Below are positions 3,869-28,463 of a stretch of 64,000 nt of DNA, in pieces; within the stretch, counting starts at the first letter, position 1, and every line of letters begins with the position of its first letter. The notes under the pieces are model-generated. The model was not told the origin of the DNA. It did not search any database and worked only from the letters and a program-made list of their open reading frames with translations. This stretch comes from Podarcis bocagei (lineage: Eukaryota): the NCBI GenBank assembly GCA_964188305.1, contig OZ076893.1. The stretch is one strand, 5' to 3'. Both the position numbers and the translations under genes were made by a program.

Positions 3869-3910
3869 TGCAGTTCTCTGCTTCAGACTCACAGTGTCAC
3901 TGTTGGACAA
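3869..3910 (+). promoter_or_regulatory. Pcdh CSE/CTCF promoter element (CACT variant of the CGCT box)
   Basis: TGCAGttctctgcttcagactcacagtgtCACTgttggacaa. TGCAG upstream module lies 29 bp before the box; element is ~250 bp upstream of the ATG. Confidence 0.8.
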
Positions 3911-4154
3911 GGCGGCAATCCAAGGGCAGCTGAAGTTCCACTGATGCTTTCTGCAGAGAGATCTCTTTGTCCCAAACTGCACATCAGGAAAACCAGCAGA
4001 CGCTGGAACAAACATTTCAGCTGAGAAAGAAAAAAGAAAACACTGCAGCATATACAAATTAAGCCAAAGGATCCAGTTCTTTTTTTACTGGGCAAAAAAA
4101 TCTCCTGTCTTGGTGGAAATCTGAAATCCTGTGCTCATCAAAGAGAAGAGGAAA

Positions 4155-6584
4155 ATGAATATGAGAGGAATCCTTCATGGAGAGAGCTTTCAAACACCAG
4201 GAAGGTATATAACACTTCTGATATTATCATCTTTGTTTTGTGGAGCAGTTTTGGAAGAGGTTCACTATTCCATCCCTGAGGAGATGGCAAAGGGGTCTTT
4301 GGTGGGAAATCTTGCCAAGGATCTGGGACTGAATGCCAGAGAACTGAAGAGCAGAAACCTGCATATCCTTTCTGAAGGTAAAAAGCCATATTTCACTATC
4401 AGTGCACAAAATGGAAACCTGTATGTAAATGAAAGGATAGATCGTGAGGAAATATGTGGGGAGAGTGTACACTGTCTGATTAATTTTGAAGCTGTGGTTG
4501 AAAATCCTTTGAATGTTTTCCATATTATTGTAGCAATTCAGGACATTAATGATAATATGCCACAGTTCTTAAATGAAATCATGAGGCTTGAAATTGTTGA
4601 ATCCACATTACCAGGTACAAGATTTCATACTGGGAAAGCGGAAGATCCTGATATTGGGACTAATACTCTCCAGAATTACCAGCTAAGTCCAAATAACTAT
4701 TTAATTCTAGAGATTCGACAGGGAGAAGATGGCCATAAATATGCAGAATTGGTGTTGCAAAAATCTTTGGATCGGGAAAGTGATCACTCCCTTCAGTTGA
4801 TCCTTACGGCCCTGGATGGGGGTGAACCCAGAAAAACTGGGACTGCCCAGATATGGATTAATGTCACAGATGCCAATGACAACCCACCAGTCTTCACTCA
4901 AGAAGTTTATACAGTTAACCTGAGGGAAAATTCTCCTGTGGGGTCGCCCATACTGCAAGTAAAAGCCTCTGATAGAGATGAAGGTCTGAATGCCCAAATT
5001 CATTATACATTTAGTAATATTCCTAAAAGAGCCTACCAAAAATTTGACCTATTTCCACAAAATGGAACAATTACAATTAAGGAAGCTCTTGACTTTGAGG
5101 AAACAGAGAAGTACACTATGACCGTTGAAGCAAGAGATGGAGGAGGATTAGTGGCTCATTGTAATGTCAATATAAAGATTCTAGATGAGAATGACAATGC
5201 TCCAGAGATCATTCTGGCCTCCTTATCCAGTCCGATTCCAGAAGACTCTGTTTCTGGAACAGTAATTGCTCTCATCAACGTAAAGGATAAAGATTCTGGA
5301 GAAAATGGAAAAATTACCTGCCACTTACAAAGTAATGTACCATTTAAAATAGTGTCAACATCTAAGAACTACTATAAAATCCTCACAGACAGTCCTTTGG
5401 ACAGAGAAAAAGCCTCAGGATACAACATCACAATCACGGCCACCGACAAAGGTAGCCCCCCTCTCTCCTCCAACAAAACCATCTCCCTGCAGATTTCAGA
5501 CATCAATGACAACCCCCCTGCCTTTGAAAAATCAACCTACAGTGTCTTTGTGCCTGAAAACAATCCCTCAGGTGCCTCCATTTTTGCCATCAAAGCCTCG
5601 GACCCGGATCTGGACCGCAACTCACGTATCACTTACTCCATCCTCAACAGCAACATGGAGGAGCTGCCTCTCTCCTCTTACGTCTCCATCAACTCTGAGA
5701 CGGGAACTATCTATGCACAGCGCTCCTTTGACTATGAGCAATTCCGGGAGTTTCACATCCAAGTGAAGGTCCAAGATGGTGGCTCTCCCTCTCTCAGCAA
5801 CAACGCCACCGTGTGGGTGTACATTTTGGATCAGAACGATAACAGCCCTCGCGTTCTGTATCCTGTCCCGGGTGCTGAGGGCTCTGCCTTGTTTGAGATG
5901 GTTCCTCACTCGGCAGAGCCAGGCTACCTAGTGACCAAAGTGGTGGCTGTGGACGCTGACTCTGGGCACAATGCCTGGCTCTCCTACCAAGTGCTGCAGG
6001 CCACGGAGCCAGCCCTCTTCACCATTGGGACCCACACGGGAGAGATCAGGACGTCACGAGCCCTTCTGGAGAAAGATGCTGTGAAACAGAAGCTGGTCAT
6101 CTTGGTGAAGGACAATGGGAAGGCTCCGCTCTCAGCTACTGTGGTCCTCAACCTTGTGGTTGCTGAGAACTTCCAAGAGGCACTTCCAGAAATGACTAGG
6201 CAATCCAGTGACACAGAACATCATTCAGACCTCCAGTTTTACTTGGTGCTGGCTTTGGCATTGATCTCATTTTTATTCCTCCTGACGGTGATACTGGTCA
6301 TTGTCATGAAACTTCGACAATCAGGAAATCCCAAATTATTCCAATGCTTTGAACCTAATGCTTTTTCTAAGGCACAGGTTATATTTCCACCAAACTATGA
6401 AGAAGGAACTTTACCTTATTCCTACCAACTCTGTCTATCATCAGAGATGAGGAAAGAGCAGATCTCTTTCCCAAAACCCCATATCCAGGTGGCAGAAAAC
6501 TTGCTATGCAATGATAGCTCTCAGGTGGTTCTTGTGGATGGCAACTGTGGGGATGCCAATGCCAAAGAGGAGGTTGGTGAGCAG
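4155..6584 (+). CDS. Protocadherin gamma-B-like variable exon (gene 1)
   Basis: Signal peptide, [22 protein letters not shown], six EC repeats (DRE, DxNDN, AxDxG), [20 protein letters not shown], and gammaB-type [13 protein letters not shown]. First ATG is at 4155 (the ORF track starts at a GTG). Donor CAG|GTAAGT at 6584/6585, phase 0; unspliced readthrough stops at 6641. Confidence 0.93.
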
Positions 6585-7844
6585 GTAAGTTTTGCTTTCA
6601 GAAACTGTGATGTTGGCATTACAACCTTGTTCCTTGTATGAGCATAACTAGTATTTTTAGCAGTCTTCCTCTTAACTGCCTAATTTGCTAAATGAGAGAA
6701 CTAAAAAAAAATCAAATTATATTACTAGCACCAGCTGTTCAGACTGTAGAAAACTTTTTTTACAAGTAGTCTACAAATTGCAATGACAGAGGCAAATTCA
6801 ATGCTAAGTCTGAAAATGACGTTCAGGTGAGTCTTCATGAATTATGGAATTTATATCCTGTTCTTCCTTCTAGTAATTTTCTTCCTGTAGATTATTAAAA
6901 TATCACCATCATTATATACAGTAGTTATTTTTTAGTTCCTCCTAGAGGTTAGATATGTGGATTTTTACTTCGTTCACTCACATAGTTTATTCATCCTGTT
7001 CTGATTCGAGTTAACTGAAAAATGTGTAAAACATGAATGCTTCCTATTTGTTCATAGTAGATCTTTTGGAGTGTTTTGAACTTCTCTGGAAGATTCATGT
7101 AGAAAGAACTTGTATGACATGCAGAATGCTCAGAAAAGCGCAACTAAGATGGTCAAGTGGGTGGAACAACTTTATTCGGGGAAAAATGCAATGCTTAACA
7201 ATATTTAGTTTAGATCAAAGACAAGGGAGAAGCAATATGAGAGAGCTGGTCCTGCCAGTGCCACATTTCAACCACATCTACAGGACAGCAAGTAATTTAA
7301 GTGGGAGGTGCAAGGCAACCAATGCTAGGATGCAACATTTTTGTGGGGCATGTCCTGAAATGAAAGGTTCCAGGTGGATATAATAAGGGAAGTTGAAATA
7401 ATAACAGGATGCACTTTATCAACAGTTATTCTGATTGTTTTATTCAGCTGTATTAAGGGTTTAATATTAGCAGAGTAGTAGTCCAAGACTTGTTAACTAT
7501 AGCAAGAACAACTATTTGGTATAAGTTGAGTGGAGTGTGTGGTTAAGAACACCAGCTTTACAGGAGTGGAGTATGGGATATTTTATCTATGGTTAAACTA
7601 ATGAATATGGTAAGAGTCAGAGTGCGGAGACTGATAACATTGTTGTGGAAAAATACAACATTTTCATACTTAATTTCACAATAAGGTTCAAGATAATACA
7701 GACGCGCACACCCTGTTAGAAACTTTATATATCGGTATGCTTTCTTTGAGTGTATAATATAAAACTATTGAAACTTGTATTCAGCCATTATTTTTATTTA
7801 TACAGAACAATCACACATACTTTACACATTTTAATAAATAAATA

Positions 7845-8050
7845 ACTTATGGGAATTGCTCCCACAAAAAGCTGTGATGGCCACTAACTTGGATGCCTTA
7901 TAGACAACTTCATGGTGGCCGCAAGTCGTGCTGACTATATCCCGTCAGGTACTAGAAGTAGGATGTCTCCAAATGCCACAGTGGGAGACAAGTTGCTTAA
8001 CAAGAAAGGCCTTGGGTCTGATCCATCAAGGCTCTTCTTATGTTGTTACA
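7845..8050 (+). mobile_element. Degenerate CR1 LINE 3' end
   Basis: gctgtgatggccactaacttggatg...tagacaacttcatgg...ggtctgatccatcaaggctcttcttatg, similar to the CR1 ends at 18400-19375. Confidence 0.6.
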
Positions 8051-8375
8051 TTTTAATGAAAGGAATTGTGTGTCCTGATGTTGTGTGATAGACTGGTGGA
8101 CAAAGGACTATAAGTGTGTTAAAGTGAGGCAATGCTCTGCTGGTGATCCCTTGGGTATGTAGCTTCCATTCAACAGGGCTCAATTTCAGTGGGACAGACA
8201 TCAAGGCAAAACATGTTTTCAATAGGCTGTATATCTCCAGACTGGGTTTTGAGTCTTGTGACCTGTTATGCGCAGCAATCAGAGGAGCTGTTGCTTTAAT
8301 GTGTACAAACTGAAAGCAAATAACTTGAAATTTGCTAAAGGGAAACTACTGTACATTGCACAACATGGTTTTCCT

Positions 8376-8417
8376 TGCAGTTCCTTGAGTGGTCCTCTAA
8401 GTGTCAGTGTTGGCCAG
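8376..8417 (+). promoter_or_regulatory. Pcdh CSE/CTCF promoter element (CAGT variant)
   Basis: TGCAGttccttgagtggtcctctaagtgtCAGTgttggccag; 29-bp spacing; identical to 28422-28463. Confidence 0.75.
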
Positions 8418-8674
8418 TATGAGAGCCAGAGAGAGGATAGAGATCCAGTGATGCTTCCTGCAGTAACTCCCATCACTGTTATTCAGATCAGGCGAGCTGA
8501 AGAGCACAGAGACAGGGAACTCTTGCAGAGAAGGAAAAATCTCTTTTGCTTTGCACAAAACAAGGGCAGTTTATTCTTCCTCAGTGATACCTCATGTTGT
8601 TTCCTTCATCACTGTGAGAGCTTGAGCATAGGAAACAGAAAAGGAAGCAGCCTGTTTTTGAGAGAACCAGCCAG

Positions 8675-11095
8675 ATGGAGAGAAGGCACCCAGGGAATGG
8701 CAGGGCACTCACAAGGCAAGTACTGCTTCTCTCTCTATTGTCTTTTACCTGTTGGGCTGCATCAGAGCAGATTCATTATTCAACCCCTGAGGAGATGGCA
8801 AAGGGTTCCGTTGTGGGGAACCTCGCCAAGGACCTGGGACTGAGCGCCAAAGAACTAAAACATCGCAATCTGCACACTGTGTCTGTGGCTAAAATGCAGC
8901 ATTTCAGTATCAATGCAGAGAATGGAAACCTCTATGTAAATGACAGGATTGATAGGGAGGGGATATGTGGCAAAAATCCACTTTGCTTTGTTCAGTTTGA
9001 AGTTGTGGTAGAAAACCCGCTGAATGTTTTCCATGTAACAGTAGAAATCCAGGATGTTAATGATAATGCGCCCCAGTTCCTGAATAGCAACATCAACTTG
9101 GGGACAGGAGAACAAACCTTGCCTGGGGCCCGCTTTCTCCTTGGGAAGGCGGAAGATCCTGACATTGGGATGAACTCTCTCCAGGATTACCAGCTGAGCT
9201 CCAATCAGTATTTCTCTTTGGAAGTTAGAGAGAGAAAAGATGGAAATAAATATGCAGAATTGGTGTTGCAGAAATCTTTGGATCGGGAAAAAGAACAAAC
9301 CCTTCACTTAGTACTTACCGCAATGGATGGGGGTAAGCCTAGGAAAACTGGAACCGCCCAGATACGGATTAATATCACCGATGCCAATGACAACCCTCCC
9401 ATTTTCACTCAAGAGGTGTACAAGGTCAGTTTGAGTGAAAATGCTCCTATTGGATCCACGGTGCTCCAGGTCATAGCCTCTGATGATGATGAAGGTTCAT
9501 ATGCCCAAATCAGGTATCATTTCAGCAACATACCAGCAACTTCCCAAGAGAAATTCAGTCTAGATCCCATTGGTGGCAGAATCACCCTCTTGGAGCGACT
9601 GGATTTTGAGGACAACGATGAATATACTATGACGGTTGCTGCAAAAGATGGCGGAGGATTGGTGACTCATTGCAATATTGAGATAAGGGTTCTTGATGAG
9701 AATGATAATGCCCCGGATGTGACCTTAACCTCCATGTTCAGCCCAGTTCCTGAAGATTCACCATCTGGAACCTTAATTGCTCTGATCAATGTAAATGACA
9801 AAGATGCCGGTGATAATGGAAAAGTTACCTGCTATTTAAACAGTGATTTGCCCTTCAAGATTATTTCCTCATCTAACAATTTCTACAAACTTCTGACAGT
9901 CAGCCCTTTGGACAGAGAAAAAACTCCTGCATATAATATTACAATCACAGCCACTGACAATGGAACTCCCCCACTGAACACCCATAAAGTCATCTTACTA
10001 CAGATATCTGATATCAATGATAATGCCCCTTCCTTTCAGAAATCTTTGTATGCTATCTATGTGCCTGAAAACAATCCTTCAGGTGCCTCCATTTTCACCA
10101 TCAAAGCCTCAGATCCCGATATGGACCAGAACTCACGGATTACATACTCCATCCTCAACAGCAACATTGAGGAGCTTCCCATCTCCTCCTATATCTCCAT
10201 TAATTCTGAGACCGGCACCATCTATGCCCAGAGATCCTTTGACTATGAACAATTCAGAGAGTTCCGGCTGCAAGTGAAGGCCCAAGATGGGGGTTCTCCC
10301 CCTCTCAGCAGCAATGTGACCGTCAGAGTGTTTGTTCTTGACAGGAATGATAACAGCCCTCGTATCCTGTCCCCCTCACAAGAAGCCAAGGGCTCAGCCT
10401 TGTTTGAGATGGTGCCTCGTTCGGCCGAGGCAGATTATCTTGTCACCAAGGTGGTGGCCGTGGATGCAGATTCTGGACACAACGCCTGGCTCTCCTACCA
10501 CCTGACTCAGGCCACTGAGCCGGCACTCTTCACGGTTGGTTCTCATACTGGAGAGATCAGGACCGCCAGGGCCTTTGTGGAGAGAGACGCTGTGAAACAG
10601 AGACTGATCATTATGGTGAAGGATAACGGACAGCCGTCTCTCTCAGCCACCATGACTCTGAACCTGGTGTTTGCTGAGAACTTTCAGGAGGCCCTTCCGG
10701 AAATGAAGAGCCAACCCAGCAGCTCGGAGTATCAGTCTGACCTGCAGTTCTACTTGGTGCTGGCCTTAGCTGTGATCTCCTTCTTGTTCCTCTTGACCGT
10801 GATTCTGGCCGTTACAATGAAGCTCCGTCACTCAGGGCATCCCAGGTTCCTACAGTGCTTTGGTCCTGTTCCCCATTCCAAGAATGGTGCCATCTTCCCA
10901 CCCAACTTTGAAGATGGGACTTTGCCCTATTCCTACCAGCTGTGTCTGTCTTCTGAGACCAGGAAGAATGAGTTTGCCTTCATGACACCCAATGTTCAGA
11001 TACTAGACAATATTCTTGGCAGTGAGAAACCTGCTGTGCCTTTTACAGGCAACAGTGGAAACAATTTTCAGTCTGAGATGGCTAATGGTGAAGAG
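8675..11095 (+). CDS. Protocadherin gamma-B-like variable exon (gene 2)
   Basis: Six EC repeats, TM, and [16 protein letters not shown]. Donor GAG|GTAAGA at 11095/11096, phase 0 (807 codons); readthrough stops at 11221. Confidence 0.93.
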
Positions 11096-11607
11096 GTAAG
11101 ATTTGTTCTCTGCAGTTACATGCATGGTACACTCTGTAGCTCTTTACCGTTAAGTGACATTTCAATACAACGTTTTATACATCATATGTACTTGCCTTTT
11201 CATTTTTCAGTCTTTAGTTAATTTTCCATCTAGATTCATGAATCATCATCTTCTTTATATATAGTAAACAGCTGAGGCTAAACTACCTGTTGCAGGTATA
11301 GTCTATTTTCTCCATTGCATTTTGAGATTTCTAGTTCAATCCTAACCATATCTACCCAGATGTGAGTCCTGTTGAATTCAGTGTGACTTTCTGTCAGGTA
11401 AGAGTGCTTAGGTTTTAAGCTTTGGAATTTGAATAGTGGGAACATGAAATTAAATGAAGTGAAATGGATATATATATTGCTCATTTAATCTTATGAGTGG
11501 GTGTGGAATGTGCCAACGTTTTTATTATGTCATTGAGGAGGTGCACTTCTTTCTGTATGGTAGAGTTGTGTGCTATTGAGTTCAATAGGGCTTACTCCCA
11601 GGTTGTA

Positions 11608-11858
11608 CAGTCGTACGTTGGAAGTCGAACAGAATCTGTTCCGGACGTTCGTTTGACTTCCAAAATGTTTGAAACCCAAATTGTTGCTTCTGACTGGATG
11701 CAGGAAGCTCCTGCAGCCAATCAGAAGTCTTGGAACCCCCATCAGACATTTGGGTTCCAAAAGAATGTTTACAAACCAGAACAATCACTTCCAGGTTTGC
11801 AGCATTCGGGAGCCAAAACATCTGAGTTCCAGGGTGTTCGGGATCCAAAGTACAATTG
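11608..11858. mobile_element. Tc1/mariner (pogo/Tigger-like) MITE
   Basis: Imperfect TIRs cagtcgtacgttgga ... tccaaagtacaattg, flanked by TA at 11606-7 and 11859-60. Confidence 0.75.
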
Positions 11859-12149: not shown

Positions 12150-12953
12150 AAGTCTGAATAGGCTAATTGTGGTTCATGTTGAAGAACATTGTACAAAGTA
12201 CTTTGACATCATGGTTCAGATCTAGAGTTTCCCTGTTTCATATACCAGTGATGATTGAATTTCACTGATCAAATTGTTGGTATTTAATTGAGCATTGAAT
12301 GCAATGCTTAACCCATTGTTTTAATGTAGGAGGTCATGTGTAATGTGGGTGCAACCTTTTTATGTTTTTACTTTAATCTTTTGGAGGTGTAAATTGTGCA
12401 GCATGTTCTCAACGCTGCCTCTGTGGACAGTTGGCGTGGGCATGGTGGCACCATTCTCTATGCCTCTGTTTGGCATGGCAGTATCTGGCCTTCTCCTTCT
12501 AGCTTCAAACAAGGCAGGATCTATCAGTTCCCAGTTGGGGCTGAATGGTAGTATTTCGTTCTTGTTGCTATATTGGCCGAATGAGAGGATGAATGACAGG
12601 AGCTTTCTCATCTGCTAGGCAGTCAATAATTAAAGACTGGCTGTATTTGGACCCCAGCCATTCTTTTTAAATGTGCCGCAACTGGCAAGTGCTATGTAGG
12701 TTAGAAAACATAAGGATCCTATAGTGAGCAGCCCAAGACCTGAAAGGAGAGTTACCCAAACCAACCTCCATGGTATTCTTACTAATTTGGGAGAATCTGG
12801 TCATGGCAATTATTCGTCTGTACTGATGACCTCATTGACTTACTGGCTCAGGGCTGATGATACCTAAAGGTCCTCATTTGCACTCAGTGGAGCTGAGGAG
12901 GAGGGCACTGAAGAGAAAAGACCAGTTTCAATATTGATCCAATACTTGGACCC
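12150..12953. repeat. Second copy of the non-coding segment at 1160-2286
   Basis: Direct alignment; the spurious ORFs 12343/12360 mirror ORFs 1635/1607. Confidence 0.85.
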
Positions 12954-14355: not shown

Positions 14356-14771
14356 TCTCCTTCCTTGGAGGTTTTTAAAACCTTGAATAAAATAATTTCC
14401 TCAATTCTCCCATCGTCTTTTTCTTTATACACTGTAACACTTCATAGAGAAATCCACTAGAGAAATTCAATTTTTCTCTTAGAGAGGTTTACAGATTGAT
14501 ATTCTTGGTAAAAATTGTAAGTGCTTTAAATTGAGGAAAAGAATCTATACTATGTTTTTATTGCTTGTTCTTTGCTGCAAATACTCCTTTGAAGTTGATT
14601 TTTTTTAACCTGTTATACAAGTGAAAGATAACACAAACAAAACACAAATAGTTCTACTTTATAACAGAAGAGGGCTCACACATCCTGTATCAGAATATAG
14701 TTTGAGTCATTAAATATAAATACCACCATGCCATGTCATGAATTAGGGAAGAAAAATCACTGGGAAAAGAT

Positions 14772-14813
14772 TGCAGTTCTCTGCTTCAGACTCACAGTGT
14801 CACTGTTGGACAA
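14772..14813 (+). promoter_or_regulatory. Pcdh CSE/CTCF promoter element (CACT variant)
   Basis: Identical to 3869-3910. Confidence 0.8.
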
Positions 14814-15060
14814 GGCGGCAATCCATGGGCAGCTGAAGTTCCACTGATGCTTTCTGCAGAGAGATCTCTTTGTCCCAAACTGCACATCGGGAAAACCAGC
14901 AGACGCTGGAACAAACGTTTCAGCTGAGAAAGAAAAAAGAAAACACTGCAGCACATACAAATTAAACCAAAAGATCCAGTTCTTTTTTTTACTGGGCAAA
15001 ATAAAATCTCCTGTCTTTGTGGACATCTGAAATCCTGTGCTCATCAAAGAGAAGAGGAAA

Positions 15061-17490
15061 ATGAACAGAAGAGGAATCCTTCATGGAGAGAGCTTTCAAA
15101 CACCAGGAAGGCATATAACACTTCTGATATTATCATCTTTGTTCTGTGGAACAGTTTTGGAAGAGGTTCACTATTCCATCCCTGAGGAGATGGCAAAGGG
15201 ATCTTTGGTGGGAAATCTTGCCAAGGATCTGGGACTGAATGCCAGAGAACTGAAGAGCAGAAACCTGCATATCCTTTCTGAAGGTAAAAAGCCATATTTC
15301 ACTATCAATGCTGAAAATGGAAACCTATATGTGAATGAGAGGATAGATCGTGAGGGAATGTGTAGAGAGAGCACACACTGCATTATTGATTTTGAAGCTG
15401 TGGTTGAAAAGCCATTGAATGTTTTCCATGTAAGTGTAGCAATTCAGGACATTAATGATAACATCCCACAATTCATAAAGGGCAATATTGGGCTTCAAAT
15501 AATTGAATCCACATTGCCAGGTGCCAAATTTCTTCTTGGGAAAGCTCAGGATCCTGATATTGGGATTAATTCTCTCCAAAATTACCAGCTGAGTTCAAAT
15601 CACTATTTCATTCTAGAGATTCGACAGAGAGAAGATGGCCATAAATATGCAGAATTGGTGTTGCAGAAACCTTTGGATCGGGAAAGTGAGCACTCGCTTC
15701 AGTTGATCCTTACGGCCTTGGATGGGGGTGAGCCCAGAAAAACTGGGACTGCCCAGATATGGATTAACATCACAGATGCCAATGACAACCCACCAGTCTT
15801 CACTCAAGAGCTTTATACAGTTAACCTGAGGGAAAATTCCCCCGTGGGGTCCCCAATACTCCAAGTAAAAGCCTCTGATAGGGATGAAGGTCTAAATGCA
15901 CATATTAGTTATATTTTTAATAACATCCCAGAAACAGCCCACCAAATATTTGAACTAGATCCACAAAGTGGAACAATTACAATTAAGGAAGCTCTTGACT
16001 TTGAGGAAACAGAGAAGTACACTATGACAGTTGAAGCAAGAGATGGAGGAGGATTAGTGGCTCACTGTAATGTTGATATAAAGATTATAGATGAGAATGA
16101 CAATGCTCCAGAGATCATTCTGGCCTCCTTATCCAGTCCGATTCCAGAAGACTCTGTTTCTGGAACAGTAATTGCTCTCATCAACGTAAAGGATAGGGAT
16201 TCTGGAGAAAACGGAAAAATTACCTGCCACTTACAAAGTAATGTTCCATTTAAAATAGCATCAGTATCTAAGAATAACTACAAAATCCACACAGACAGTC
16301 CTTTGGACAGAGAAAAAGCCTCAGGATACAACATCACAATCATGGCCACTGACAAAGGTAGCCCTCCTCTCTCCTCCAACAAAACCATCTCCCTGCAGAT
16401 TTCAGATATCAATGACAACCCCCCTGCCTTTGAAAAATCAACCTACAGTGTCTTTGTGCCTGAAAACAATCCCTCAGGTTCCTCCATTTTCTCCATCAAA
16501 GCCTCGGACCCGGATCTGGACCGCAACTCACGTATCACTTACTCCATCCTCAACAGCAACATGGAGGAGCTGCCTCTCTCCTCTTACGTCTCCATCAACT
16601 CTGAGACGGGAACTATCTATGCACAGCGCTCCTTTGACTATGAGCAATTCCGGGAGTTTCACATCCAAGTGAAGGTCCAAGATGGCGGCTCTCCCTCTCT
16701 CAGCAACAACGCCACCGTGTGGGTGTACATTTTGGATCAGAACGATAACAGCCCTCGCGTTCTGTATCCTGTCCCAGGTGTTGAGGGCTCTGCCTTGTTT
16801 GAGATGGTTCCTCACTCGGCAGAGCCAGGCTACCTAGTGACCAAAGTGGTGGCTGTGGACGCTGACTCTGGGCACAATGCCTGGCTCTCCTACCAAGTGC
16901 TGCAGGCCACGGAGCCAGCCCTCTTCACCATTGGGACCCACACGGGAGAGATCAGGACGTCACGAGCCCTTCTGGAGAAAGATGCTGTGAAACAGAAGCT
17001 GGTCATCTTGGTGAAGGACAATGGGAAGGCTCCGCTCTCAGCTACTGTGGTCCTCAACCTTGTGGTTGCCGAGAACTTCCAAGAGGCACTTCCGGAAATG
17101 ACTAGGCAATCCAGTGACACAGAACATCATTCTGACCTCCAGTTTTACTTGGTGCTGGCTTTGGCATTGATCTCATTTTTATTCCTCATGACAGTGATAC
17201 TGGTCATTGTCATGAAACTTCGACAATCAGGAAATCCCAAATTATTCCAGTGCTTTGAACCTAATGCTTTTTCTAAGGCGCAGGTCATATTTCCACCAAA
17301 CTATGAAGAAGGAACTTTACCTTATTCCTACCAACTCTGCCTATCGTCAGAGATGAGGAAAGAGCAGATCTCTTTCCCGAAACCCCATATCCAGGTTACA
17401 GAAAACTTGCTGTGCAATGATAGCTCTCAGGTGGTTCTTGTGGATGGCAACTGTGGGGATGCCAATGCCAAAGAGGAGGTTGGTGAGCAG
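15061..17490 (+). CDS. Protocadherin gamma-B-like variable exon (gene 3; close paralogue of genes 1 and 6)
   Basis: Same architecture; ATG at 15061. Donor CAG|GTAAGC at 17490/17491, phase 0 (810 codons, same length as gene 1). Confidence 0.93.
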
Positions 17491-17881
17491 GTAAGCTTTG
17501 CTTTCGGAACTGTGATGTTGGCAGCACAGGCTTGCTCCTCGTAGGAATAAAACCAGACCTTTCTTTCTGTCAGAATGCACCAGCACTCAGTTCTGGCGCC
17601 TCTCAGGTAGGCTATTTTGCCATTATAAGAGAACAAAGTAGGCACCTCTTTGCCTAGACAAATTGCACTGAGTAAAACTAATATTTTTAGCTTGTCTTCC
17701 TCTTACCTACCTGATTTAGTACATGAGAGAACTAGAAAAACATGAAATTATATTACTAGAACCTGCTGTTCAGAATGTAGAGAATTTTTTTTACAAGCCT
17801 TCAAGTTGCAATGGCAGGGGCATTTTCAATGCTGTAGCTGAAAATTATGTTCAGGTGAGTCTTGATCTTGTTATGGTTTAA

Positions 17882-19375: not shown

Positions 19376-20949
19376 TGGAATGGAATTCTGTGCATGGGTA
19401 TGCTGTGTGGTGTTGTGAGACAGACCGTAAGATGAAAATTTAATGAATTTAATAAATGGGGGGAAATTGCATCTTGTGGGCTATTATACAGAACAATAAT
19501 AGGGGCTATTACCATTAATGTGGACAAATCAAAATCAAACTACTTCTGTTATTTTCCAAGGAAACCTCTACAGTATCGTAAAATCCTTCTGAATTGGATA
19601 TCTTGATTTCTTGTATCACTCTCTTACTTTGTCTTTCTATTGCTCTCAGTTCCTGACCGTCATAATGTAATCATCACAATCTTTTCATTTAATGTATTTC
19701 ATATATTACTTAATTGCCAAAGTCTCTAATCTAGCAATCCTTTGACATCCTCCTTCATCTAGAGCATATGAGTTCAAATATACCAGTAATGGTGTGTACA
19801 AACTGCATGATAATGTGCATTCAGTTCCGGATTCAGATACGCCTTTTGGGGGTGCTGTGCACACGTCATCCCGATGTCAGCCCTGTCCCACACTATTTGT
19901 CATTTTAGGTGTATCCTTCTGGAATGGTTATAATCTGTTTTGTGCCAAGATTGTACTTCTCAAGCACTTGTTGCATGCATGTGTAGACCAAGAATGCTTT
20001 CTTAGGTCACCTCCTATTGGAGCAGATCTACTGATGTTGCATGGCTGTGCCACTGCAACTCACCTTGTTTAACCTGTCTGTGAATGAAAGAGGCAAAAAC
20101 AAAAACGGAGCAGTACAGCAACTTAGCTCTCTCCATAAACATATGTATATCAACACATCAGTTTCCAACCCCCTCTCAAAAGACTGAAAAAATATGTGCT
20201 TTTTAAAAGGTATGTGAAAATAGGAAGTACTGATGGGGAGGGGAACACAGAACTTCATTACACACTAGTTTGAAAACATGCCCACCTGTGTACAGACAGC
20301 ACAGAGAGTAGCTGCTACTTTGGATGATGTTATTGCACAAAGGTGTGTGAAATTGCAAACAACCAGGTCTTTTTTCCAGTAGCACCTCTCCTGAGCATTC
20401 CGGCAGACCTGGGATGGATTGGGACTTGGCGTGGTGAGTGTTTTGGGCTCTTTTTAAGGTAGTTGGTGTGGCGTGTGTTTTTGATTGCTCCCAAAAAGAA
20501 GCTCAACAACTTTGGGAGTTCCTGCACCTCTCTTTGTAAAGAAGAAGAAGAAGAAGCACTGCAAACAACTACGTACAAAGTGAGGGGGGGTGATTTCCCC
20601 TGTGCATTTTAGAGGCTACATGTGTACACAGCCTATGATGTCCAACAAACCTATTTCACGCTGTTGGATCCAATACAATGCCAAGCGCTGGTAGAGCAAT
20701 TACTGCAATTGTTCCTGCATTGGTGGTTAGATCCTGCTCTGGCCACAGGGGAGCAAATGCTGCAGAAGGAGCTCTGCATGGCACCAGCAAGTAGGAGTCT
20801 GCTATGGAACTAATACCAGTGAACAGATTTTTATGACCCACCACTGCCTAAGTAGAAGCGGGAGAGATCTTAACATTGCTGCTTATTGTACCCTCAGTAA
20901 ACAGGCGCTGTCTAAATAGAAGTTGTTTATTGTACCCTCAGTAAACAGA

Positions 20950-21016
20950 AAGGAAGGAAGGAAGGAAGGAAGGAAGGAAGGAAGGAAGGAAGGAAGGAAG
21001 GAAGGAAGGAAGGAAG
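20950..21016. repeat. (GGAA)n microsatellite
   Basis: Perfect AAGG run. Confidence 0.97.
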
Positions 21017-21917
21017 ATGCATGGGATTCTCTGAAACTGTTCCTTACCTCCAGAATTTGGCAGATTGTAAAGATTCAACTGTAAGGACTTGTAAGGAAAC
21101 TATAATCAAAAGCACAGAAAATAGCACTTCTGAAAGACAGAGGGAGCAGATGCTAGATGAATACTGTTATATGAGTCAGCATTGTGATGCTGTGGCGCAA
21201 AAGAGCTGGACCATGTGTAGTTTGCATTTACAGGAGAACTCTTGGAGTAGCCAGATTTCTACTAGGGACCGAGAAGAACTGTTCTGGACACATGCATTCC
21301 GTAAATGCTGATTGACAGACATCTAACAACTTAGGAAAGATTCAAAAAAGAATTATTCCAGCCCTTCTGCTGAAGAAAATAATTATAATAAATAAATTTT
21401 CAGAAAATGTTTAATTAAGCATCCCTTAGTTTGCCTTTTTCATATAAAAAAAGTTTTAGAATGTTTTACTTTGAAATTATTTTACAAGTTCCCTCCCCTC
21501 ATAATGTTTTGTGAGGAATTCCTAGTAGATGCTGTGATGTATTTCCAGTAAAAATGTTTTTAAAATACTATATATATTTAGGAGTCAATGTTCCAAGAGC
21601 TAGGGAAAATGCATGGAAACATAAGATTTTCATGACTTTCATCTAACATTAGGATTCCTATGTACAAATTTCCATACTTGTTTATGCAGTAACTGTGGAG
21701 TTGCACATTACATACCTATGTAGAAAACTTAATCTTACCAAGGGAGGTTTAACTGACTTGTTGGTTATTGGGGTTCTCTCCTTTTCTAGCGAATAAGAAT
21801 CCACTTCTACGCTTACAAAGGATAACTTGGTGTTTCATGATAAATTAAAATAAATACTCACTTGGTTTTGTTTATCTGTGAAACAGTGTGCACACCAGCA
21901 GCATTCCCGCTTATGTG

Positions 21918-22050
21918 GGATACCTCAGTTCAGTAGAGTATGAGACTCTTAATGTGGGTTTAAGCCCCATGTGGGACAAAAAGATTCCTGAATTACAGGG
22001 GATTGGACTAGATCACCTTCGTGGTGCCTTCAAAATCTGTGATCCTATTA
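21918..22050 (+). mobile_element. Degenerate tRNA-derived SINE with CR1-like tail
   Basis: cctcagttcagtagagtatgagactcttaat..gtgggtttaagccccatg (A/B-box-like), followed by gattcctg..caggggattggactagat. Confidence 0.55.
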
Positions 22051-22157
22051 TATGTCTTGTGTATTGACGCAAATAAATGCATTAAATTGATAGAGCAAGG
22101 AAACACAAGCATGACATTTAGTGATAAAACAGGTTAGTAATTAATTTATGCATTGTG

Positions 22158-22224
<67 letters not shown>
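22158..22224. repeat. Compound (TA)n(CA)n microsatellite
   Basis: Perfect runs, ~45 bp upstream of the gammaA CSE. Confidence 0.97.
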
Positions 22225-22227
<3 letters not shown>

Positions 22228-22269
22228 GTTGGATATACAATGAGAATCGAAACAAAAAAATGTAGTGTG

Positions 22270-22310
22270 TGCAGTTCCTGGCTGTGACTCTGAGTGTCGC
22301 TGTTGACCAA
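22270..22310 (+). promoter_or_regulatory. Pcdh CSE/CTCF promoter element (canonical CGCT box)
   Basis: TGCAGttcctggctgtgactctgagtgtCGCTgttgaccaa; 28-bp spacing. Confidence 0.9.
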
Positions 22311-22496
22311 CCAAGGCTAAGAAATATACTGAGAAATTCATCCTTCCCAGATGAGCAGCTCAGCTCAGAAAATGCTGAGAGATCAGAGTTTCAGTGAACA
22401 TTTTTGCTTTGGGAATCTCAGCTGCAAGTCCCTTTCTGGCAACACTCCGTCATCCTGAATCACAGATCTCCCCAACAGCTTCATATCAGACCAGGA

Positions 22497-24908
22497 ATGG
22501 CAACAGCAAAGTATCCCCAAGCTTGCAAAAGGAGAGTTTTCTTTTTATTTCTGTTTGCTAACATCTGCCAAGCCATCACCAGACAGATCCAGTACTCCAT
22601 TCCTGAAGAAACTGAGAGAGGCTTTTTGGTGGGGAATATTGCAAGGGATCTTGGACTGGACGCAAAGGAGCTCTCAGATCGTGGAATTCGCATTGTTTCC
22701 CCAGGTAGGACTCAGTATTTTGCTTTGAATTATAAGAGTGGCCATTTGCACACCACAAAGAGAATAGACAGAGAGGAGATCTGTGGTCAGGAAGAGAAAT
22801 GTATTTTGAATTTTGAGATTATAGTTGAAGATTCAATGAAAATTTATGGAGTTGAAGTGGAAGTGACAGATATCAATGACCATGCACCCACCTTCCCGTC
22901 AGAGAAACTAGTGATAAATATCAGCGAGAATGCAGCTTTGGGGTCCCAGTTTCCCCTCTTGGAAGCTCAAGATCCTGATTTAGGAAACAATTCTCTACAG
23001 GGGTACAAACTCAGCAACAATAGCCATTTTTCTTTGATTCTCCAAACATCAGTTAAGGGCAAACAATATGGAAAAATTGTGTTGGAAAGACCTCTGGACC
23101 ATGAAAAAGAAGCAGTTCATAATCTTATCTTCACCGCATATGATGGTGGTGATCCAGTCAGGAGTGGCACTGCACAGCTGCACATTACAGTCCTGGATGC
23201 GAATGACAATGCACCGATTTTTAGCCAACGCATCTATGAAGTGAGCGCAAGGGAGGATTTACCTCTAGGAACCATTGTGGTTACATTAAAAGCTACTGAT
23301 CTGGATGAAGGGACCAACAAAGAAATGACATTTTCGTTTGCAGAAATCACGGAAAAGGCTTCCCAGATATTCCACTTAGATAAACACACAGGTGCACTAA
23401 CTCTCATAGGAAGTTTAGATTATGAGGACTCTGCTCTTCATGAAATTGAGGTCCAGGTCCGTGATGGTGGAGGTCTATTGGACAGATCAACTGTCATAGT
23501 ATTTGTTACTGATGTAAATGACAATGCACCCAAACTGGAAATAACTTCACTTATCAGCTCCATCCCTGAGAACTCTCCACCAGCGACTGCAATAGCCCTT
23601 CTGAATGTGCAAGATGAGGATTCGGCAGAGAATGCAGAAGTCACGTGCTCTATCCCCAGCAACCTCCCCTTTCTACTGACAAAAGCCTATGGCAACTACT
23701 ACAGTTTGGTGACAGCAAGAGCCCTGGACAGAGAGCAGGTGGCAGCCTACAACATCACTGTCACTGTCACGGATCATGGGACCCCTCCACTTTCCACATC
23801 GATTGTTATTCCACTTGAGATTTTAGACACAAATGACAACCCTCCACACTTCCTGCAATCCGTTTATACTTCGTATTTAATGGAGAACAACCCAAGAGGG
23901 GCCTCCATATTTTCCCTGAAAGCTGATGATCCAGACTGTGGAGAGAACTCCAGAGTCACTTATTCCATCATTGAGCACAACATCAGTGACTCCCCAGTAT
24001 CTTTCTTCCTCTCCATTAACTCTGAGACTGGGATTGTCTATGGCCTGATCTCTTTTGATTATGAGGAGATGAGGGAGATTAAGTTCCTGGTCAAGGCCCA
24101 GGACGGAGGTTCTCCACCACTCAGCTCCAACGTCTCAGTGACTCTCTTCATCCTGGACCAGAATGACAATGCTCCCCAAATCCTGTACCCCTCCGCTCCC
24201 ACTGATGGCTCCACGGGGATAGAGCTGGCCCCTCGCTCCTCTGAGTCAGGCTACCTGGTCACTAAGGTGGTGGCCGTGGATGCGGACTCTGGCCAGAATG
24301 CCTGGCTCTCCTACCAGCTGATCAAGGCCACCGAGCCAGGGCTCTTCACTCTGGGGCTCCACACGGGAGAGATCAGGACAGCCCGCTTCTTTCTGGAGAA
24401 AGATGCCCTCAAGCAAAGCCTGGTGGTTTTAGTCAAGGACAATGGGCAGCCACCTCTCTCTGCTTCAGCCACTCTGACTGTGGTGCTGGCTGACACCATC
24501 CCTGCAATCCTCTCAGACCTGAGCAGCATCTCAGCTCCTGTAGAACCTCCGTCTGACCTCACCTTCTACCTGGTCCTTGCAGTGGCTTTTGTCTCCTGCT
24601 TGTTCTTCATCTTCCTCCTTGTGTTACTGGCAGTTAAACTTCATAGGTGGAGATATTCACAGTCTGGAACTGAGAAGTTTAGTGGAGTTCCAGTTTCACA
24701 GTTTGTGGGGATTGACGGAGTCCGAGCATTTCTGCACTCCTACTGCCAGGAGGTTTCTCTCACTACAGACTCTAGGAAGAGCAATTTCGGATTTCCCAAG
24801 GGAAATATTTCCAATACTATGACCAGTCACCAGCCCTGTGAGATAAATGATCCCTTTCTCATTGCTGAAGAGATTGCAAACAGTAATGGGGATTCAGCCA
24901 ATATACAG
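22497..24908 (+). CDS. Protocadherin gamma-A-like variable exon (gene 4)
   Basis: gammaA hallmarks: [78 protein letters not shown] at 22497 (the ORF track starts at a TTG). Donor CAG|GTGAAG at 24908/24909, phase 0. Confidence 0.92.
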
Positions 24909-27138
24909 GTGAAGTCTTGCTATCAAATCAAAGGTTTTTCACTTTATATTTTCAGTTAGACATTAATGCCATTTATATTATTTGTTTTGCACTTGTTCTG
25001 AAGAAATGGAACTGGAGACATATTCTCTCATTTATACTTGTTCTCTTCAGATAAAATGAGGTTTGGGAGTTCACATAGTTCACTTTTTGTATATGTGGTT
25101 GTTTCTGTCGCAAGCAAATGCGTGTAGAGATAGGAGAATTGTAAACAGCTTGTCCCACAAGAGCTTAAGTGCTTAAAGAGCAACCATGAGACAAATATTA
25201 GAGATATTCATATATTTTCTTGTTCAGCAATTTTTGCATGATTGTGATGGTTATCTTGTTTAAATTGAATGCTTCTTTCGGAGCTTCTTTCTTGAGCTTC
25301 TTGCCTCTTGGAAAGGTTATTTAGTTCTCAAATAATAGTATCTGTTGAAAATCTAGGCTTCCCAAAATATTTGAACTTTTATTTACTGCCCTCTAATTCT
25401 GTGTCTGAAATAGTTTATGTCTTTACTCATATGGATAGATCAGTTGTGTGTTTACTAAACAGGGTCAATAATCTATCTAATTAGTATTTTCCAGCCTTAT
25501 GAGCAGTAGGTGGTAACTCAGGTGTTTCTCAGCCTAGCTTTATTAGATGTTTTAAAAAACTGGAGATATCAGGAATTAAACCTGTATACTAAGTAAGAAC
25601 TCATCTAGTTTATTGGCCAAGTATGTGAGCTGATAGGCATGAGATCTGTAATTTGAATATTGGCTCTTGCCACAAACTTTGGTGACATTAAATGATTTAT
25701 TGCATTTAAAAATGGAAATAGATCCCTTGGATGGGACAGCAGAAGCAGAGTTGCAAGAAAAATCTTAACCCAATTCATTATTTGCACTGAGAAGGCGAAA
25801 GGTCCCATTGATACTGTCTCTGCACCCATGGTCATGATCCTGCTCCCCCAATGACATCTATTTCCATTAAGAATGCATTTTCATTCAATGTAATAAAACA
25901 TTTAAAGCCACATATGCTTTTGCTCTAATTAGGCATGTTACTTTTTCTCATTCTCAGCTGCAAATCTGTAATACCAGTGCAATAAATCACACTGGCCTAA
26001 CACTCAGAAGTGCCATATAATGGCCAAGTATTGTCTCTGCCAGTGGGGAATGGCTCCCTGCTCTTTCCCTTCCATTGGTTCAGTCTCCCAGAATTTCATC
26101 ATATAGAAAACAATGGTGTGTTAAATGTTCGTGTAGTAGGATATTATAACAAGGCAAATTTATTTCACATTTTGAGCAATAATATTTGGCCTCATCTGAG
26201 AGTCTAAAGAGGTCAGACAGGTATTTTAATAAGCCAGTGATGATACACAAAGCAATCCAACCCCCATTTCCACTGAGCTAGGGAACAATGGGGTTGGATT
26301 AGGCAGAGACGTCCCCCTGCCTGGCTCTCTCGGTTCAGCTGACATCACCTTCTACCTGCTGGATGTGCAGGAGCCAATGGAGAGCCCCAAATGGGGCATT
26401 CTGAGGGCAGGGGCATGGCTGAGCTGGCCCAGTAACTGCTGTATCCTGAGCCAGTCTTGCTGCAGTCATGCAACAGACTCGGACCAGGTCATTCTGGATC
26501 TCCATATTCTGCTATGGCTAATGTGAACAGCAGGGCTGTGGATCTGGCAGTGGCCGCATAACTCTGCAAAGTCCCAACGGTGGGAGGGGACTTTTTGATG
26601 TGTGTCCTCCTATAGTTGCCTTCAGTTAGCTCAAGCCATATGTAATTGTATATTTATCATCCTTGTATTTTGTATGATTTTTTAAAAAAACTTTCTGCAA
26701 TATGAATGAGAGAAGCTATGAGAGCAATGAAAATCTTTCAGTTCTGGATGGAGTTGGATGACTTTATAAAGAATGCCAGGCTCTTGTTGGATATGTCTGA
26801 ACACGGCACAAGGCCTGTTTGCGTTTCTATGATTTGTCTTAGGAGCAGCAAAGAGAGTTTCCTTGTTCACTGAAATTGCATGGGGGTGCCACGCAGGACT
26901 GTTTTAGCTGTTGACAGGAAGCTACAACTCAATCTATCCCCACCACCCAAAGCAAGCTACCTCCTAAAGACCACGGTGGCATATTTTCAATAAAACCTGC
27001 TAACAAAATTGCTCACATTGGTCCTATTTATACCTCAGAATCAGAAGATCTCGCTTCTAACACCTTAGACTTACAAATCTTTTATCACTCTGTCTTTTTT
27101 ATCTGTTAACATTGGCAAGTCATTACCACTCCTTGAAG

Positions 27139-27240
27139 ATTCGCCACTTTTTCCCTGAGGAAATGGAGGAAGGCTCTTTACTTGGAAGTATCACCAAGGA
27201 TCAGCAACTACTGGTGATAAAGAAACTCTCAAACCTTGAA
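27139..27240 (+). pseudogene. Relic of a Pcdh EC1 N-terminus (probably gammaA)
   Basis: attcgccactttttccctgaggaaatggaggaaggctctttacttggaagtatcaccaaggatcag translates to IRHFFPEEMEEGSLLGSITKDQ, compared with [22 protein letters not shown] in gene 4. No continuing ORF. Confidence 0.6.
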
Positions 27241-28009
27241 ACCACCCCACACTGTTTACCATGACAGGATTCAATTCTCTGCTTCAAATTAATGGCACAG
27301 TTTATTTGTGCAACACAGATATGTAATATGGTGGGGGAACGTTAAATATATTAGTTATATCTGTACACAAGTATATATATTAACAATGTCACCATATTAC
27401 CAATAAAAAGTGGACATGAGTATCATCTTCATGTAAGCGAAACTGCAGTCCCAGATGCAATCTCAATTTTCACAGCACTATCTAAAAAGCCACTGAAAGT
27501 AGCTCTAGCCTCTGTGTTCCTATGCTGTCTTCTGATCCCTTTGCTGAAGACCTTGGAGAGAGCCTCTGGTCTCCTCTGGGAGCTGCAGCCTCCTCAGTCA
27601 AAGTCCTAGTGCATGAAGAAGCTACACCCATTATTGACAAGGAAGGCAAAAGAGGAATCTTCCTTTGAATATGTCTGCAAAACGCTAACTGCCATCTCTG
27701 CCCACATCTACCATGAACTGAGGTTACTGAGAAGAGTAGCAGGGAAAAGAGAGCCCATTCTTCACTTTGTTGCTGAAGGGAACTGAGTGAAGCGGGGGGG
27801 AATTATCCATAAGTTTATCCACACCTAGTATCTCAAAGGGCCTTCCACTGCATTTAAAAAGGGATAGTTTGTGCTTCTTTTGCATGTATGTGTAAGGGGA
27901 ATAATGAAAATCTGCCAGAGCCACCAATCCCATTTTGAAAGGGAGCTGGATTGAGGCCACTTAGAAAATAAATGAAATCTATTCATAACCAAACATTATG
28001 AGTGTAGTT

Positions 28010-28182
28010 ACAGGTAGGTATATTGGTCTGCCGTAGTCAAAACAAAATTTAAAAAATCCTTCCAGTAGCACCTTAGAGACCCATTAAGTTTGTTATTGGT
28101 ATGAGCTTCCGTGTGCATGCACAAATAAGTGTGCATGCACACGAAAACTCATACCAATAACAAACTTAGTTGGTCTCTATCG
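28010..28182. mobile_element. Penelope-like element inverted pLTR remnant (hairpin) with 11-bp TSD
   Basis: Fold-back 28074-28179 (tagagac..aagtttgttattggtatgagc..gtgtgcatgcac / gtgcatgcacacgaaaactcataccaataacaaacttag..gtctcta). TGAGTGTAGTT is duplicated at 27999-28009 and 28183-28193. Confidence 0.75.
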
Positions 28183-28421
28183 TGAGTGTAGTTTGTTTTA
28201 TTTTTGTTTTATTTATATTGCTTTTTTGGACCTGTAACCCACCCTGGAAGCCTTTGTTGCTGAAGGTGTGGACAATAAAAGTAATGTGCTAAACAAAGGT
28301 GAAACAAGGAAAAACTTTTTCAAATGCTCCACTTGCAATTGGCTAAAGAAAAAGTTCACATTGTGGAAACGTGCATTATTTTAGCTCCATCTTTCTATGT
28401 TATGGTGAACATGGTTTTCCT

Positions 28422-28463
28422 TGCAGTTCCTTGAGTGGTCCTCTAAGTGTCAGTGTTGGCCAG
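28422..28463 (+). promoter_or_regulatory. Pcdh CSE/CTCF promoter element (CAGT variant)
   Basis: Identical to 8376-8417. Confidence 0.75.

What the first reader, a model, noticed from the sequence alone, without database searches (positions are those of the whole stretch)
3869..28463. Four of eight Pcdh promoters carry CpG-free CSE/CTCF sites (CGCT changed to CACT or CAGT)
Seen: genes 1 and 3 have ...gtgtCACTgtt and genes 2 and 5 have ...gtgtCAGTgtt, with no CpG anywhere in the 42-bp element. Genes 4, 6, 7 and C3 keep CGCT. The TGCAG module, the spacing and the downstream GTTG are intact, and all four ORFs are intact. Known: in mammals, stochastic Pcdh promoter choice is tied to DNA methylation that blocks CTCF at the CSE, and the general CTCF motif tolerates CAC/CAG at this position. 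Inference: two separate gammaB lineages may have methylation-insensitive CTCF anchors, and so be constitutively looped or chosen by a different rule. That would be a variant of the neuronal barcode mechanism.
Basis: partly seen in the sequence, partly recalled or inferred. Interest (0 to 1): 0.7.

Follow-up and report, generated by a model that had tools for sequence, protein, structure and literature searches.

The report
CpG-less protocadherin promoter elements in a lizard
Four of the eight neuronal protocadherin promoters in this wall-lizard window have lost the single CpG of their conserved CTCF-binding element, most likely through ordinary decay of methylated CpGs at a motif position where CTCF accepts the change, so it is a real but modest variant and not shown to be a new gene-choice rule.

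Summary
Eight protocadherin variable exons (six gamma-B-like, one gamma-A-like, one gamma-C3-like) each carry one conserved sequence element (CSE). The box reads CACT in g1/g3, CAGT in g2/g5 and CGCT in g4/g6/g7/g8. The four variant 42-bp elements contain no CpG.

- The four cases reduce to two losses. g1/g3 and g2/g5 are old paralogue pairs whose promoter and 5' exon are kept 97-100% identical, probably by gene conversion.
- All alternate promoters are as CpG-poor as the intergenic DNA (observed/expected 0.05-0.27 against 0.21). Only the C3-like promoter is a CpG island. CG to CA is therefore the expected mutation.
- The box maps to CTCF core positions 12-15, where the consensus is C-R-S. Published structures show CpG, methyl-CpG and CpA are all accepted at 12-13.
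- All four genes look functional: intact exons, consensus splice donors, dN/dS 0.24-0.29, and separate orthologues in other lacertids.

CSEs without a CGCT box are already reported for zebrafish and Xenopus alpha clusters.

Two unchecked notes from this scan report the same loss in 6/10 and 7/10 CSEs of neighbouring windows of this genome, so it may be cluster-wide.

The parts
3869..3910 (+). CSE of g1 (gamma-B-like); box CACT at 3898-3901; no CpG in the element
4155..6584 (+). g1 variable exon, first ATG to splice donor CAG|GTAAGT; 6 cadherin repeats, TM and Cadherin_C_2
   Evidence: 96% aa identity to Podarcis lilfordi gamma-B1-like X11
8376..8417 (+). CSE of g2 (gamma-B-like); box CAGT at 8405-8408; no CpG in the element
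8675..11095 (+). g2 variable exon, donor GAG|GTAAGA
   Evidence: 94-95% aa identity to Zootoca X18 and P. lilfordi X16
14772..14813 (+). CSE of g3; box CACT at 14801-14804; identical to the g1 CSE
15061..17490 (+). g3 variable exon, donor CAG|GTAAGC
22270..22311 (+). CSE of g4 (gamma-A-like); box CGCT at 22298-22301; spacing 1 bp shorter
28422..28463 (+). CSE of g5; box CAGT at 28451-28454; identical to the g2 CSE
28735..31146 (+). g5 variable exon, donor AAG|GTATGG
34450..34491 (+). CSE of g6 (gamma-B-like, closest paralogue of g1/g3); box CGCT at 34479-34482
42666..42707 (+). CSE of g7 (gamma-B-like); box CGCT at 42695-42698
56550..56591 (+). CSE of g8 (gamma-C3-like), inside the only CpG island of the window; box CGCT at 56578-56581; 6 CpGs in the element
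3794..6638 (+). Tract shared by g1 and g3 (partner 14702-17543), 94% overall. Promoter and 5' exon are 97-99% identical, the EC2-EC3 part about 83%, and the 3' half 97-100%.
8362..11032 (+). Tract shared by g2 and g5 (partner 28408-31092), 91.5% overall. It starts abruptly 14 bp upstream of the CSE, and the first ~96 bp, CSE included, are 100% identical.

Best explanation
These are working protocadherin promoter elements. Each is a CTCF-type site made of an upstream motif TGCAGTTCY and a weak core ending in the CGCT box.

In two gamma-B lineages the single CpG of the box mutated to CpA. This is the usual route: deamination of a methylated cytosine on the opposite strand. The g2/g5 lineage carries a further C-to-G change.

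The loss happened in promoters that are as CpG-depleted as the surrounding intergenic DNA, so they were probably methylated in the germ line. It fell on CTCF core positions 13 and 14, which are degenerate (R and S), so CTCF binding is expected to survive.

Each variant now sits in two genes. The promoter and 5' exon of old paralogue pairs are kept almost identical by gene conversion or unequal crossover.

Shown here: the sequences, the CpG depletion, the paralogue mosaic, and purifying selection on the exons. Inferred: germ-line methylation, retained CTCF binding, and the absence of any special choice rule.
For: - CSE states and CpG counts.
- CpG observed/expected is 0.05-0.27 in the alternate promoters, 0.21 in 34.7 kb of intergenic DNA, and 1.12 at the C3-like promoter.
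- The g1 and g3 promoters differ at two more sites by CpA against CpG. g2 and g5 differ at one CpG. CpG decay is therefore ongoing.
- Register: with CGCT at core positions 12-15, the upstream TGCAGTTCC puts T at -12 and C at -10, as in the CTCF ZF9-11 structure paper. The review assigns ZF3 to the CGCT box.
- Consensus CCASYAGRKGGCRS, with the H19 and FII sites reading GGCAG. CpG or CpA both occur at positions 12-13, and ZF3/ZF4 accept all forms.
- Seven of the nine best core-consensus matches elsewhere in the window read CA at 12-13, and none reads CG.
- Both losses went CG to CA, which CTCF tolerates. Neither went CG to TG, which would destroy the near-invariant C12.
- g6 and g7 are closer relatives of g1/g3 than g2/g5 are, and they keep CGCT. 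The two losses are therefore independent.
- Genes are intact: domains, splice donors, dN/dS 0.24-0.29.
- g1, g2, g3 and g5 each group with their own orthologue in P. lilfordi, P. muralis, Zootoca or Lacerta.
- CSEs without a CGCT box are already reported in zebrafish and Xenopus alpha clusters.
Against: - There are no data on CTCF binding, methylation or expression for this species.
- The core match to the CTCF consensus is weak for all CSEs here (9-12 of 15), so a one-base change could matter more than in a strong site.
- Three of five independent alternate lineages keep the CpG. That is more than the ~21% background retention, and it hints at some preference for G at this position.
- Reviews citing Guo 2012 state that methylation of exactly this CpG blocks CTCF at Pcdh promoters. 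If so, its loss has a regulatory consequence.
Confidence: 0.68

Rival explanations
1. Without a CpG in the element, CTCF cannot be excluded by CpG methylation. These four promoters would then be constitutive loop anchors, or be chosen by a different rule from their CGCT neighbours.
For: - There is no CpG in the 42-bp element.
- The Pcdh literature states that methylation of the CGCT CpG precludes CTCF binding.
- The same literature states that the CpG-free HS5-1b site is constitutively occupied.
- The rest of the element and the genes are intact.
Against: - Structural and binding studies place the inhibitory methyl at core C2. Methylation at 12-13 is neutral or slightly stimulatory.
- One Pcdh-alpha EMSA study saw no effect of CpG methylation.
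- All alternate promoters are CpG-poor, so any methylation-based control is thin for the CGCT genes as well.
- The CAC context can still be methylated in neurons.
- The loss may be the majority state across the cluster, according to unchecked notes.
- Silencing can also act through chromatin marks other than DNA methylation (general knowledge).
Confidence: 0.12
2. Promoter weakening. The substitutions reduce CTCF affinity at an already weak core, so these genes are chosen less often or are on the way to being lost.
For: - The core matches only 9-12 of 15 consensus positions.
- Point mutations in the CSE reduce promoter activity in mammals.
- Another promoter of the same cluster is reported as disrupted by a transposon (earlier finding).
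Against: - dN/dS is 0.24-0.29, the ORFs and splice donors are intact, and orthologues are kept in several lacertids.
- The changed bases are consensus-compatible.
- With CAGT, the g2/g5 core scores highest of all CSEs in this register, 12 of 15.
- Every other invariant CSE position is kept.
Confidence: 0.08
3. A cluster-wide shift. In lacertids most alternate gamma promoters lack the box CpG and all are CpG-poor, so promoter choice in this lineage does not depend on CpG methylation of the CTCF site at all. The four promoters are then examples of the general state.
For: - In this window, 4 of 7 alternate CSEs lack the CpG and all 7 promoters are CpG-poor.
- Unchecked first-reader notes report 6 of 10 and 7 of 10 in neighbouring windows.
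- Zebrafish and Xenopus alpha CSEs lack the box.
- Human PCDHG promoters are associated with CpG islands.
Against: - The neighbouring windows could not be read here.
- No methylome or expression data were available.
- Few CpGs can still carry regulation, and the retained CpG in 3 of 5 lineages suggests some constraint.
Confidence: 0.12

Closest known systems
Mammalian clustered-protocadherin CSE (CGCT-box promoter element, a forward-oriented CTCF site; Wu et al. 2001, as described in PMC7811963 and PMC6881428)
   Same: One element lies about 200-290 bp upstream of each variable-exon ATG, on the coding strand. It has a conserved TGCAG module, a fixed spacing, and a box followed by TGTTG. The C-type promoter lies in a CpG island.
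   Different: In four elements the box reads CACT or CAGT, so there is no CpG. The alternate promoters here are CpG-poor, whereas human PCDHG promoters are associated with CpG islands.
CSEs without a CGCT box in zebrafish and Xenopus tropicalis alpha-protocadherin promoters (PMC4978886)
   Same: [quoted passage not shown]
   Different: Those cases are in alpha clusters of fish and frog. Here the elements are gamma-B-type, in a squamate, sit next to CGCT-bearing neighbours, and differ by only one or two bases.
HS5-1b, the CpG-free CTCF site of the Pcdh-alpha enhancer (bioRxiv 10.1101/525543)
   Same: A CTCF-type site in a Pcdh cluster without any CpG. It is described as not regulated by CpG methylation and as constitutively occupied.
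   Different: HS5-1b is an enhancer site in reverse orientation in mammals, and its occupancy has been measured. The lizard sites are promoter sites with no occupancy data.
Generic CTCF sites with CpA at core positions 12-13 (PMC10484683, PMC10325916, PMC6746451)
   Same: C-A-C and C-A-G at positions 12-14 fit the consensus C-R-S. Only 29% of CTCF motifs carry a CpG at position 2 or 12.
   Different: The lizard cores are weak matches overall and probably depend on the upstream motif.

Membership tests
Clustered protocadherin variable exon (gamma type) | One large exon encoding a signal peptide, six cadherin repeats, a TM segment and a short cytoplasmic part | tested here: met
   Pfam finds Cadherin_2, five Cadherin domains and Cadherin_C_2 in all eight ORFs. 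Best named relatives are gamma-B, gamma-A12-like and gamma-C3-like.
Clustered protocadherin variable exon (gamma type) | Exon ends in a 5' splice donor that joins it to shared constant exons | tested here: met
   GT donors lie exactly where full-length Zootoca isoforms switch to the constant-region sequence.
Pcdh conserved sequence element (CSE) | Conserved ~22-42 bp element at a fixed distance (~200 bp) upstream of the start codon, same strand as the gene | tested here: met
   There are eight elements, one per exon, with the box 137-284 bp upstream of the first in-frame ATG.
Pcdh conserved sequence element (CSE) | Highly conserved CGCT box | tested here: not met
   g1/g3 read CACT and g2/g5 read CAGT. 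g4, g6, g7 and g8 read CGCT. The box is also absent in zebrafish and Xenopus alpha CSEs, so the feature is not universal.
CTCF-binding site | Match to the core consensus CCASYAGRKGGCRS | tested here: inconclusive
   In the register with the box at positions 12-15, the CSEs score 9-12 of 15 positions, and g2/g5 score 12. This was a plain consensus count, not a calibrated matrix.
CTCF-binding site | Upstream motif at the right distance (T at -12, C at -10) | tested here: met
   TGCAGTTCC/T ends 9 bp before the core. The T and C fall at the stated positions (sequence; numbering from PMC10484683). g1/g3 have T in place of C at -10.
CTCF-binding site | CTCF occupancy in cells | not testable with these tools
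   No ChIP data are reachable from here.
Methylation-insensitive constitutive CTCF anchor (HS5-1b-like) | No CpG in the site | tested here: met
   There are 0 CpGs in the 42-bp element of g1, g2, g3 and g5. The nearest CpG is at +15 in g1/g3, +88 in g2 and -81 in g5.
Methylation-insensitive constitutive CTCF anchor (HS5-1b-like) | Cell-invariant CTCF/cohesin occupancy | not testable with these tools
   This needs ChIP or single-cell data from lizard neurons.

The most novel reading that the evidence does not exclude
In lacertid lizards the CpG of the CSE box is dispensable across the whole gamma cluster, and alternate promoters sit in germ-line-methylated, CpG-poor DNA. Stochastic promoter choice there would then not be gated by CpG methylation of the CTCF site. 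The methylation-gated CGCT box of mammals would be a lineage-specific refinement and not the ancestral barcode mechanism.
Probability: 0.2. Interest if true: 0.6.

Novelty: new member of a known kind. Interest (0 to 1): 0.3.

Why it matters
If CpG-free and CGCT promoters behave alike in lizard neurons, that would be natural evidence that methylation of the box CpG is not needed for stochastic protocadherin choice. This point is disputed between the Pcdh literature and CTCF structural work. If they behave differently, the neighbouring twin promoters differ by one or two bases in an otherwise identical element. They would then be a ready-made natural experiment. On present evidence the simplest reading is ordinary CpG decay at a tolerated motif position.

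Tried and rejected
- **Reads.** The look-up of sequencing runs listed DNA runs of at least six coded organisms holding the 6-kb stretch, plus some RNA runs. After that, no letters of 5913-5955 were sent to any search tool. Only local scripts read the window file.
- **Papers.** Guo 2012 (PNAS) and Yin 2017 (Cell Res) are not held. Their claims are cited through reviews.
- **Anole cluster paper.** It does not discuss the CSE.
- **Single origin of the CpA state.** Rejected, because g6 and g7 are closer to g1/g3 than g2/g5 are, and they keep CGCT.
- **Recent tandem duplication as the only cause of the twin promoters.** Rejected, because each twin has its own orthologue in other lacertids and EC2-EC3 differ by about 20%.
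- **Sequencing error.** Rejected, because each variant is read twice in independent copies.
- **A compensating exonic CTCF site in the four genes.** None was found. The only exonic consensus match is in g4.
- **Metagenome and prokaryote collections.** Not scanned. They do not hold lizard DNA and could return human-like contigs.


Full report
**What is in the window**

The plus strand carries eight long ORFs of 817-856 codons. Each encodes Cadherin_2, five Cadherin repeats and the protocadherin cytoplasmic domain Cadherin_C_2. The closest named proteins are lacertid gamma-B protocadherins. g1 is 96% identical to a Podarcis lilfordi isoform. g2 is 94-95% identical to Zootoca vivipara and P. lilfordi isoforms. 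g4 is gamma-A-like and g8 is gamma-C3-like. The window is therefore the 3' part of the gamma cluster of a wall lizard.

Each variable exon ends in a consensus GT donor. The donor lies exactly where full-length lacertid isoforms change to the shared constant-region sequence. I built no joined spliced model. The exons were handled one by one.

**The observation**

An alignment of the eight upstream regions shows one conserved element per gene. It has the form TGCAGTT, about 12 variable bases, CTC, then ..G.G.C..TGTTG.
- The box reads CACT in g1 and g3.
- It reads CAGT in g2 and g5.
- It reads CGCT in g4, g6, g7 and g8.

The 42-bp element holds no CpG in g1, g2, g3 and g5. It holds one in g4, g6 and g7, and six in g8. 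The pattern is far above chance: 5 matches against 0.09 expected, and 6 against 0.07. No relic CSE exists elsewhere in the window. One small addition: g1 and g3 have a CpG 15 bp after the box, just outside the element.

**Four promoters, two events**

g1 and g3 share a tract from 3794 to 6638, 94% identical. g2 and g5 share one from 8362 to 11032, 91.5% identical. Both tracts are mosaics. Promoter and 5' exon are 97-100% identical, the EC2-EC3 part about 80%, and the 3' half 97-100%. The g2/g5 tract starts abruptly 14 bp before the CSE, and its first ~96 bp are identical.

A tree of the N-terminal 360 residues places each twin with its own orthologue:
- g1 groups with P. lilfordi X11.
- g2 groups with P. 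lilfordi X16 and Zootoca X18.
- g5 groups with P. lilfordi X18 and a Lacerta agilis protein.
- g3's nearest rows by path are a P. muralis protein (92% identical) and a Zootoca protein. It shares a supported six-row set with the Zootoca protein, but the fork inside that set is unresolved.

The pairs are therefore old duplicates whose promoters were homogenised later. This is the concerted evolution known for these clusters (cites it for lizard as well).

g6 and g7 are closer to g1/g3 (dS 0.21-0.26 for g6, 0.71 for g1 against g7) than g2/g5 are (dS 1.29), and they keep CGCT. The CpG was thus lost at least twice independently.

**Mutational background**

CpG observed/expected is 0.05-0.27 in the seven alternate promoters and 0.24-0.32 in their exons. 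It is 0.21 in 34.7 kb of intergenic DNA and 1.12 at the C3-like promoter, the only CpG island. The alternate promoters are thus not protected from CpG decay, which indicates germ-line methylation (inference).

The twin promoters show the process at work. Two of the few g1/g3 differences are CpA in g1 against CpG in g3. g2 keeps a CpG that g5 has lost.

CG to CA in the box is the same kind of change. Both independent losses went to CA and none went to TG.

**Where the box sits in the CTCF motif**

The review by Wu and Jia assigns the CGCT box to zinc finger 3. That puts the box at core positions 12-15. In this register the upstream TGCAGTTCC places T at -12 and C at -10. These are the two positions the ZF3-ZF11 structure paper names as specified by ZF9-ZF10. 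The register therefore holds.

The consensus is CCASYAGRKGGCRS, and the classical H19 and chicken FII sites read GGCAG. CAC and CAG at 12-14 are consensus bases.

In a simple consensus count the CSEs score 9-12 of 15 in this register, and g2/g5 score the highest, at 12. Seven of the nine best core matches elsewhere in the window read CA at 12-13, and none reads CG.

**Does this CpG gate CTCF?**

The evidence conflicts.
- Pcdh reviews state that methylation of the box CpG precludes CTCF binding. They also describe a CpG-free Pcdh site, HS5-1b, as constitutive.
- Structural and quantitative binding work places the inhibitory methyl at core C2. Full methylation at 12-13 slightly enhanced affinity. 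ZF3/ZF4 accept CpG, methyl-CpG, both hemimethylated forms and CpA. A methyl on the opposite strand, which the T of TpG mimics, stimulates binding.
- One Pcdh-alpha study found no effect of CpG methylation on the SSE-CSE complex.
- Only 29% of CTCF motifs have a CpG at position 2 or 12, so CpG-free cores are the norm.
- CACT is a CAC context, the preferred target of neuronal non-CpG methylation. The cytosine is therefore not necessarily unmethylatable.

**Are the genes alive?**

Yes, as far as sequence can tell. The domains are intact and the donors are intact. dN/dS is 0.29 for g1/g3 and 0.24 for g2/g5. Separate orthologues are retained in other lacertids. This argues against simple promoter decay.

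**Comparison with what is known**

CSEs without a CGCT box are already described for zebrafish and Xenopus alpha promoters. In Xenopus gamma the box is less conserved than in mammals. The anole cluster paper does not treat promoters. Human PCDHG promoters are associated with CpG islands overlapping CTCF sites, unlike the CpG-poor lizard promoters.

I file the finding as a new member of a known kind. These are CSE/CTCF promoter sites with a consensus-compatible, CpG-free box in a squamate gamma cluster.

**Earlier notes of this scan**

Two unchecked first-reader notes on neighbouring windows of the same genome report that six of ten and seven of ten CSEs have lost the box CpG, and that the promoters are CpG-poor. 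I could not read those windows. If the notes are right, the loss is the majority state. That weakens the idea of two special lineages. It raises a broader question: whether CpG methylation of the CSE matters at all in this species. A followed-up note describes a transposon splitting another CSE of this cluster.

**What could not be done**

- Consequently there is no cross-species promoter alignment and no RNA evidence.
- The run search shows only that the 6-kb stretch is held, at least in part, in runs of seven coded organisms. It also shows that some small runs guessed to be RNA hold 21-30% of its sampled words. That is a weak lead and not evidence of expression.

**Verdict**

The proposed new choice rule is possible but unsupported. 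The most likely reading is ordinary decay of a methylated CpG at a degenerate CTCF position, spread to paralogues by gene conversion, in genes that remain functional.

Noticed in passing
window 1-64000 (promoters at 3769-4154, 8276-8674, 14672-15060, 22170-22496, 28322-28734, 34350-34708, 42566-42831; island about 56000-58000): All seven alternate promoters have CpG observed/expected of 0.05-0.27, no higher than the intergenic DNA (0.21). The gamma-C3-like promoter is a strong CpG island (1.12). This suggests germ-line methylation of alternate promoters but not of C-type promoters.
   Followed up: yes
window 8362 and 3794 (partners 28408 and 14702): The homogenised tracts between old paralogues include the whole promoter. 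In g2/g5 the tract begins only 14 bp upstream of the CSE, so promoters are co-converted with the 5' exon.
   Followed up: partly
window 54273-54287 (+) and 54310-54324 (-): Two good matches to the CTCF core consensus (13 of 15) lie in opposite orientation 23 bp apart. They sit about 2.2 kb upstream of the C3-like CSE, between the alternate and C-type exons. This could be a boundary element.
   Followed up: no
window 23732-23746 (+): A CTCF core-consensus match (AGAGCAGGTGGCAGC, 13 of 15) lies inside the gamma-A-like exon g4, about 1.2 kb after its ATG. It recalls the exonic CTCF sites of mammalian alpha exons. None was found in the gamma-B exons.
   Followed up: no
window 22183-22224: A perfect (AC)21 microsatellite lies about 45 bp upstream of the g4 CSE.
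   Followed up: no
window 135-1061 (-): A 308-codon ORF carries a reverse-transcriptase domain (RVT_1, E 2e-31). It is a retroelement fragment in the intergenic DNA upstream of g1.
   Followed up: partly
window 1480-2286 and 12181-12953: An 807-bp intergenic block is 92% identical between the regions upstream of g1 and g3. It is separated from the gene tracts by unrelated DNA, and may be a remnant of an older segmental duplication.
   Followed up: no
window 42832-42951: The g7 ORF and its Zootoca orthologue start about 40 codons further upstream, relative to the first cadherin domain, than the other genes. The CSE box lies only 137 bp from that ATG. A downstream ATG may be the real start.
   Followed up: no
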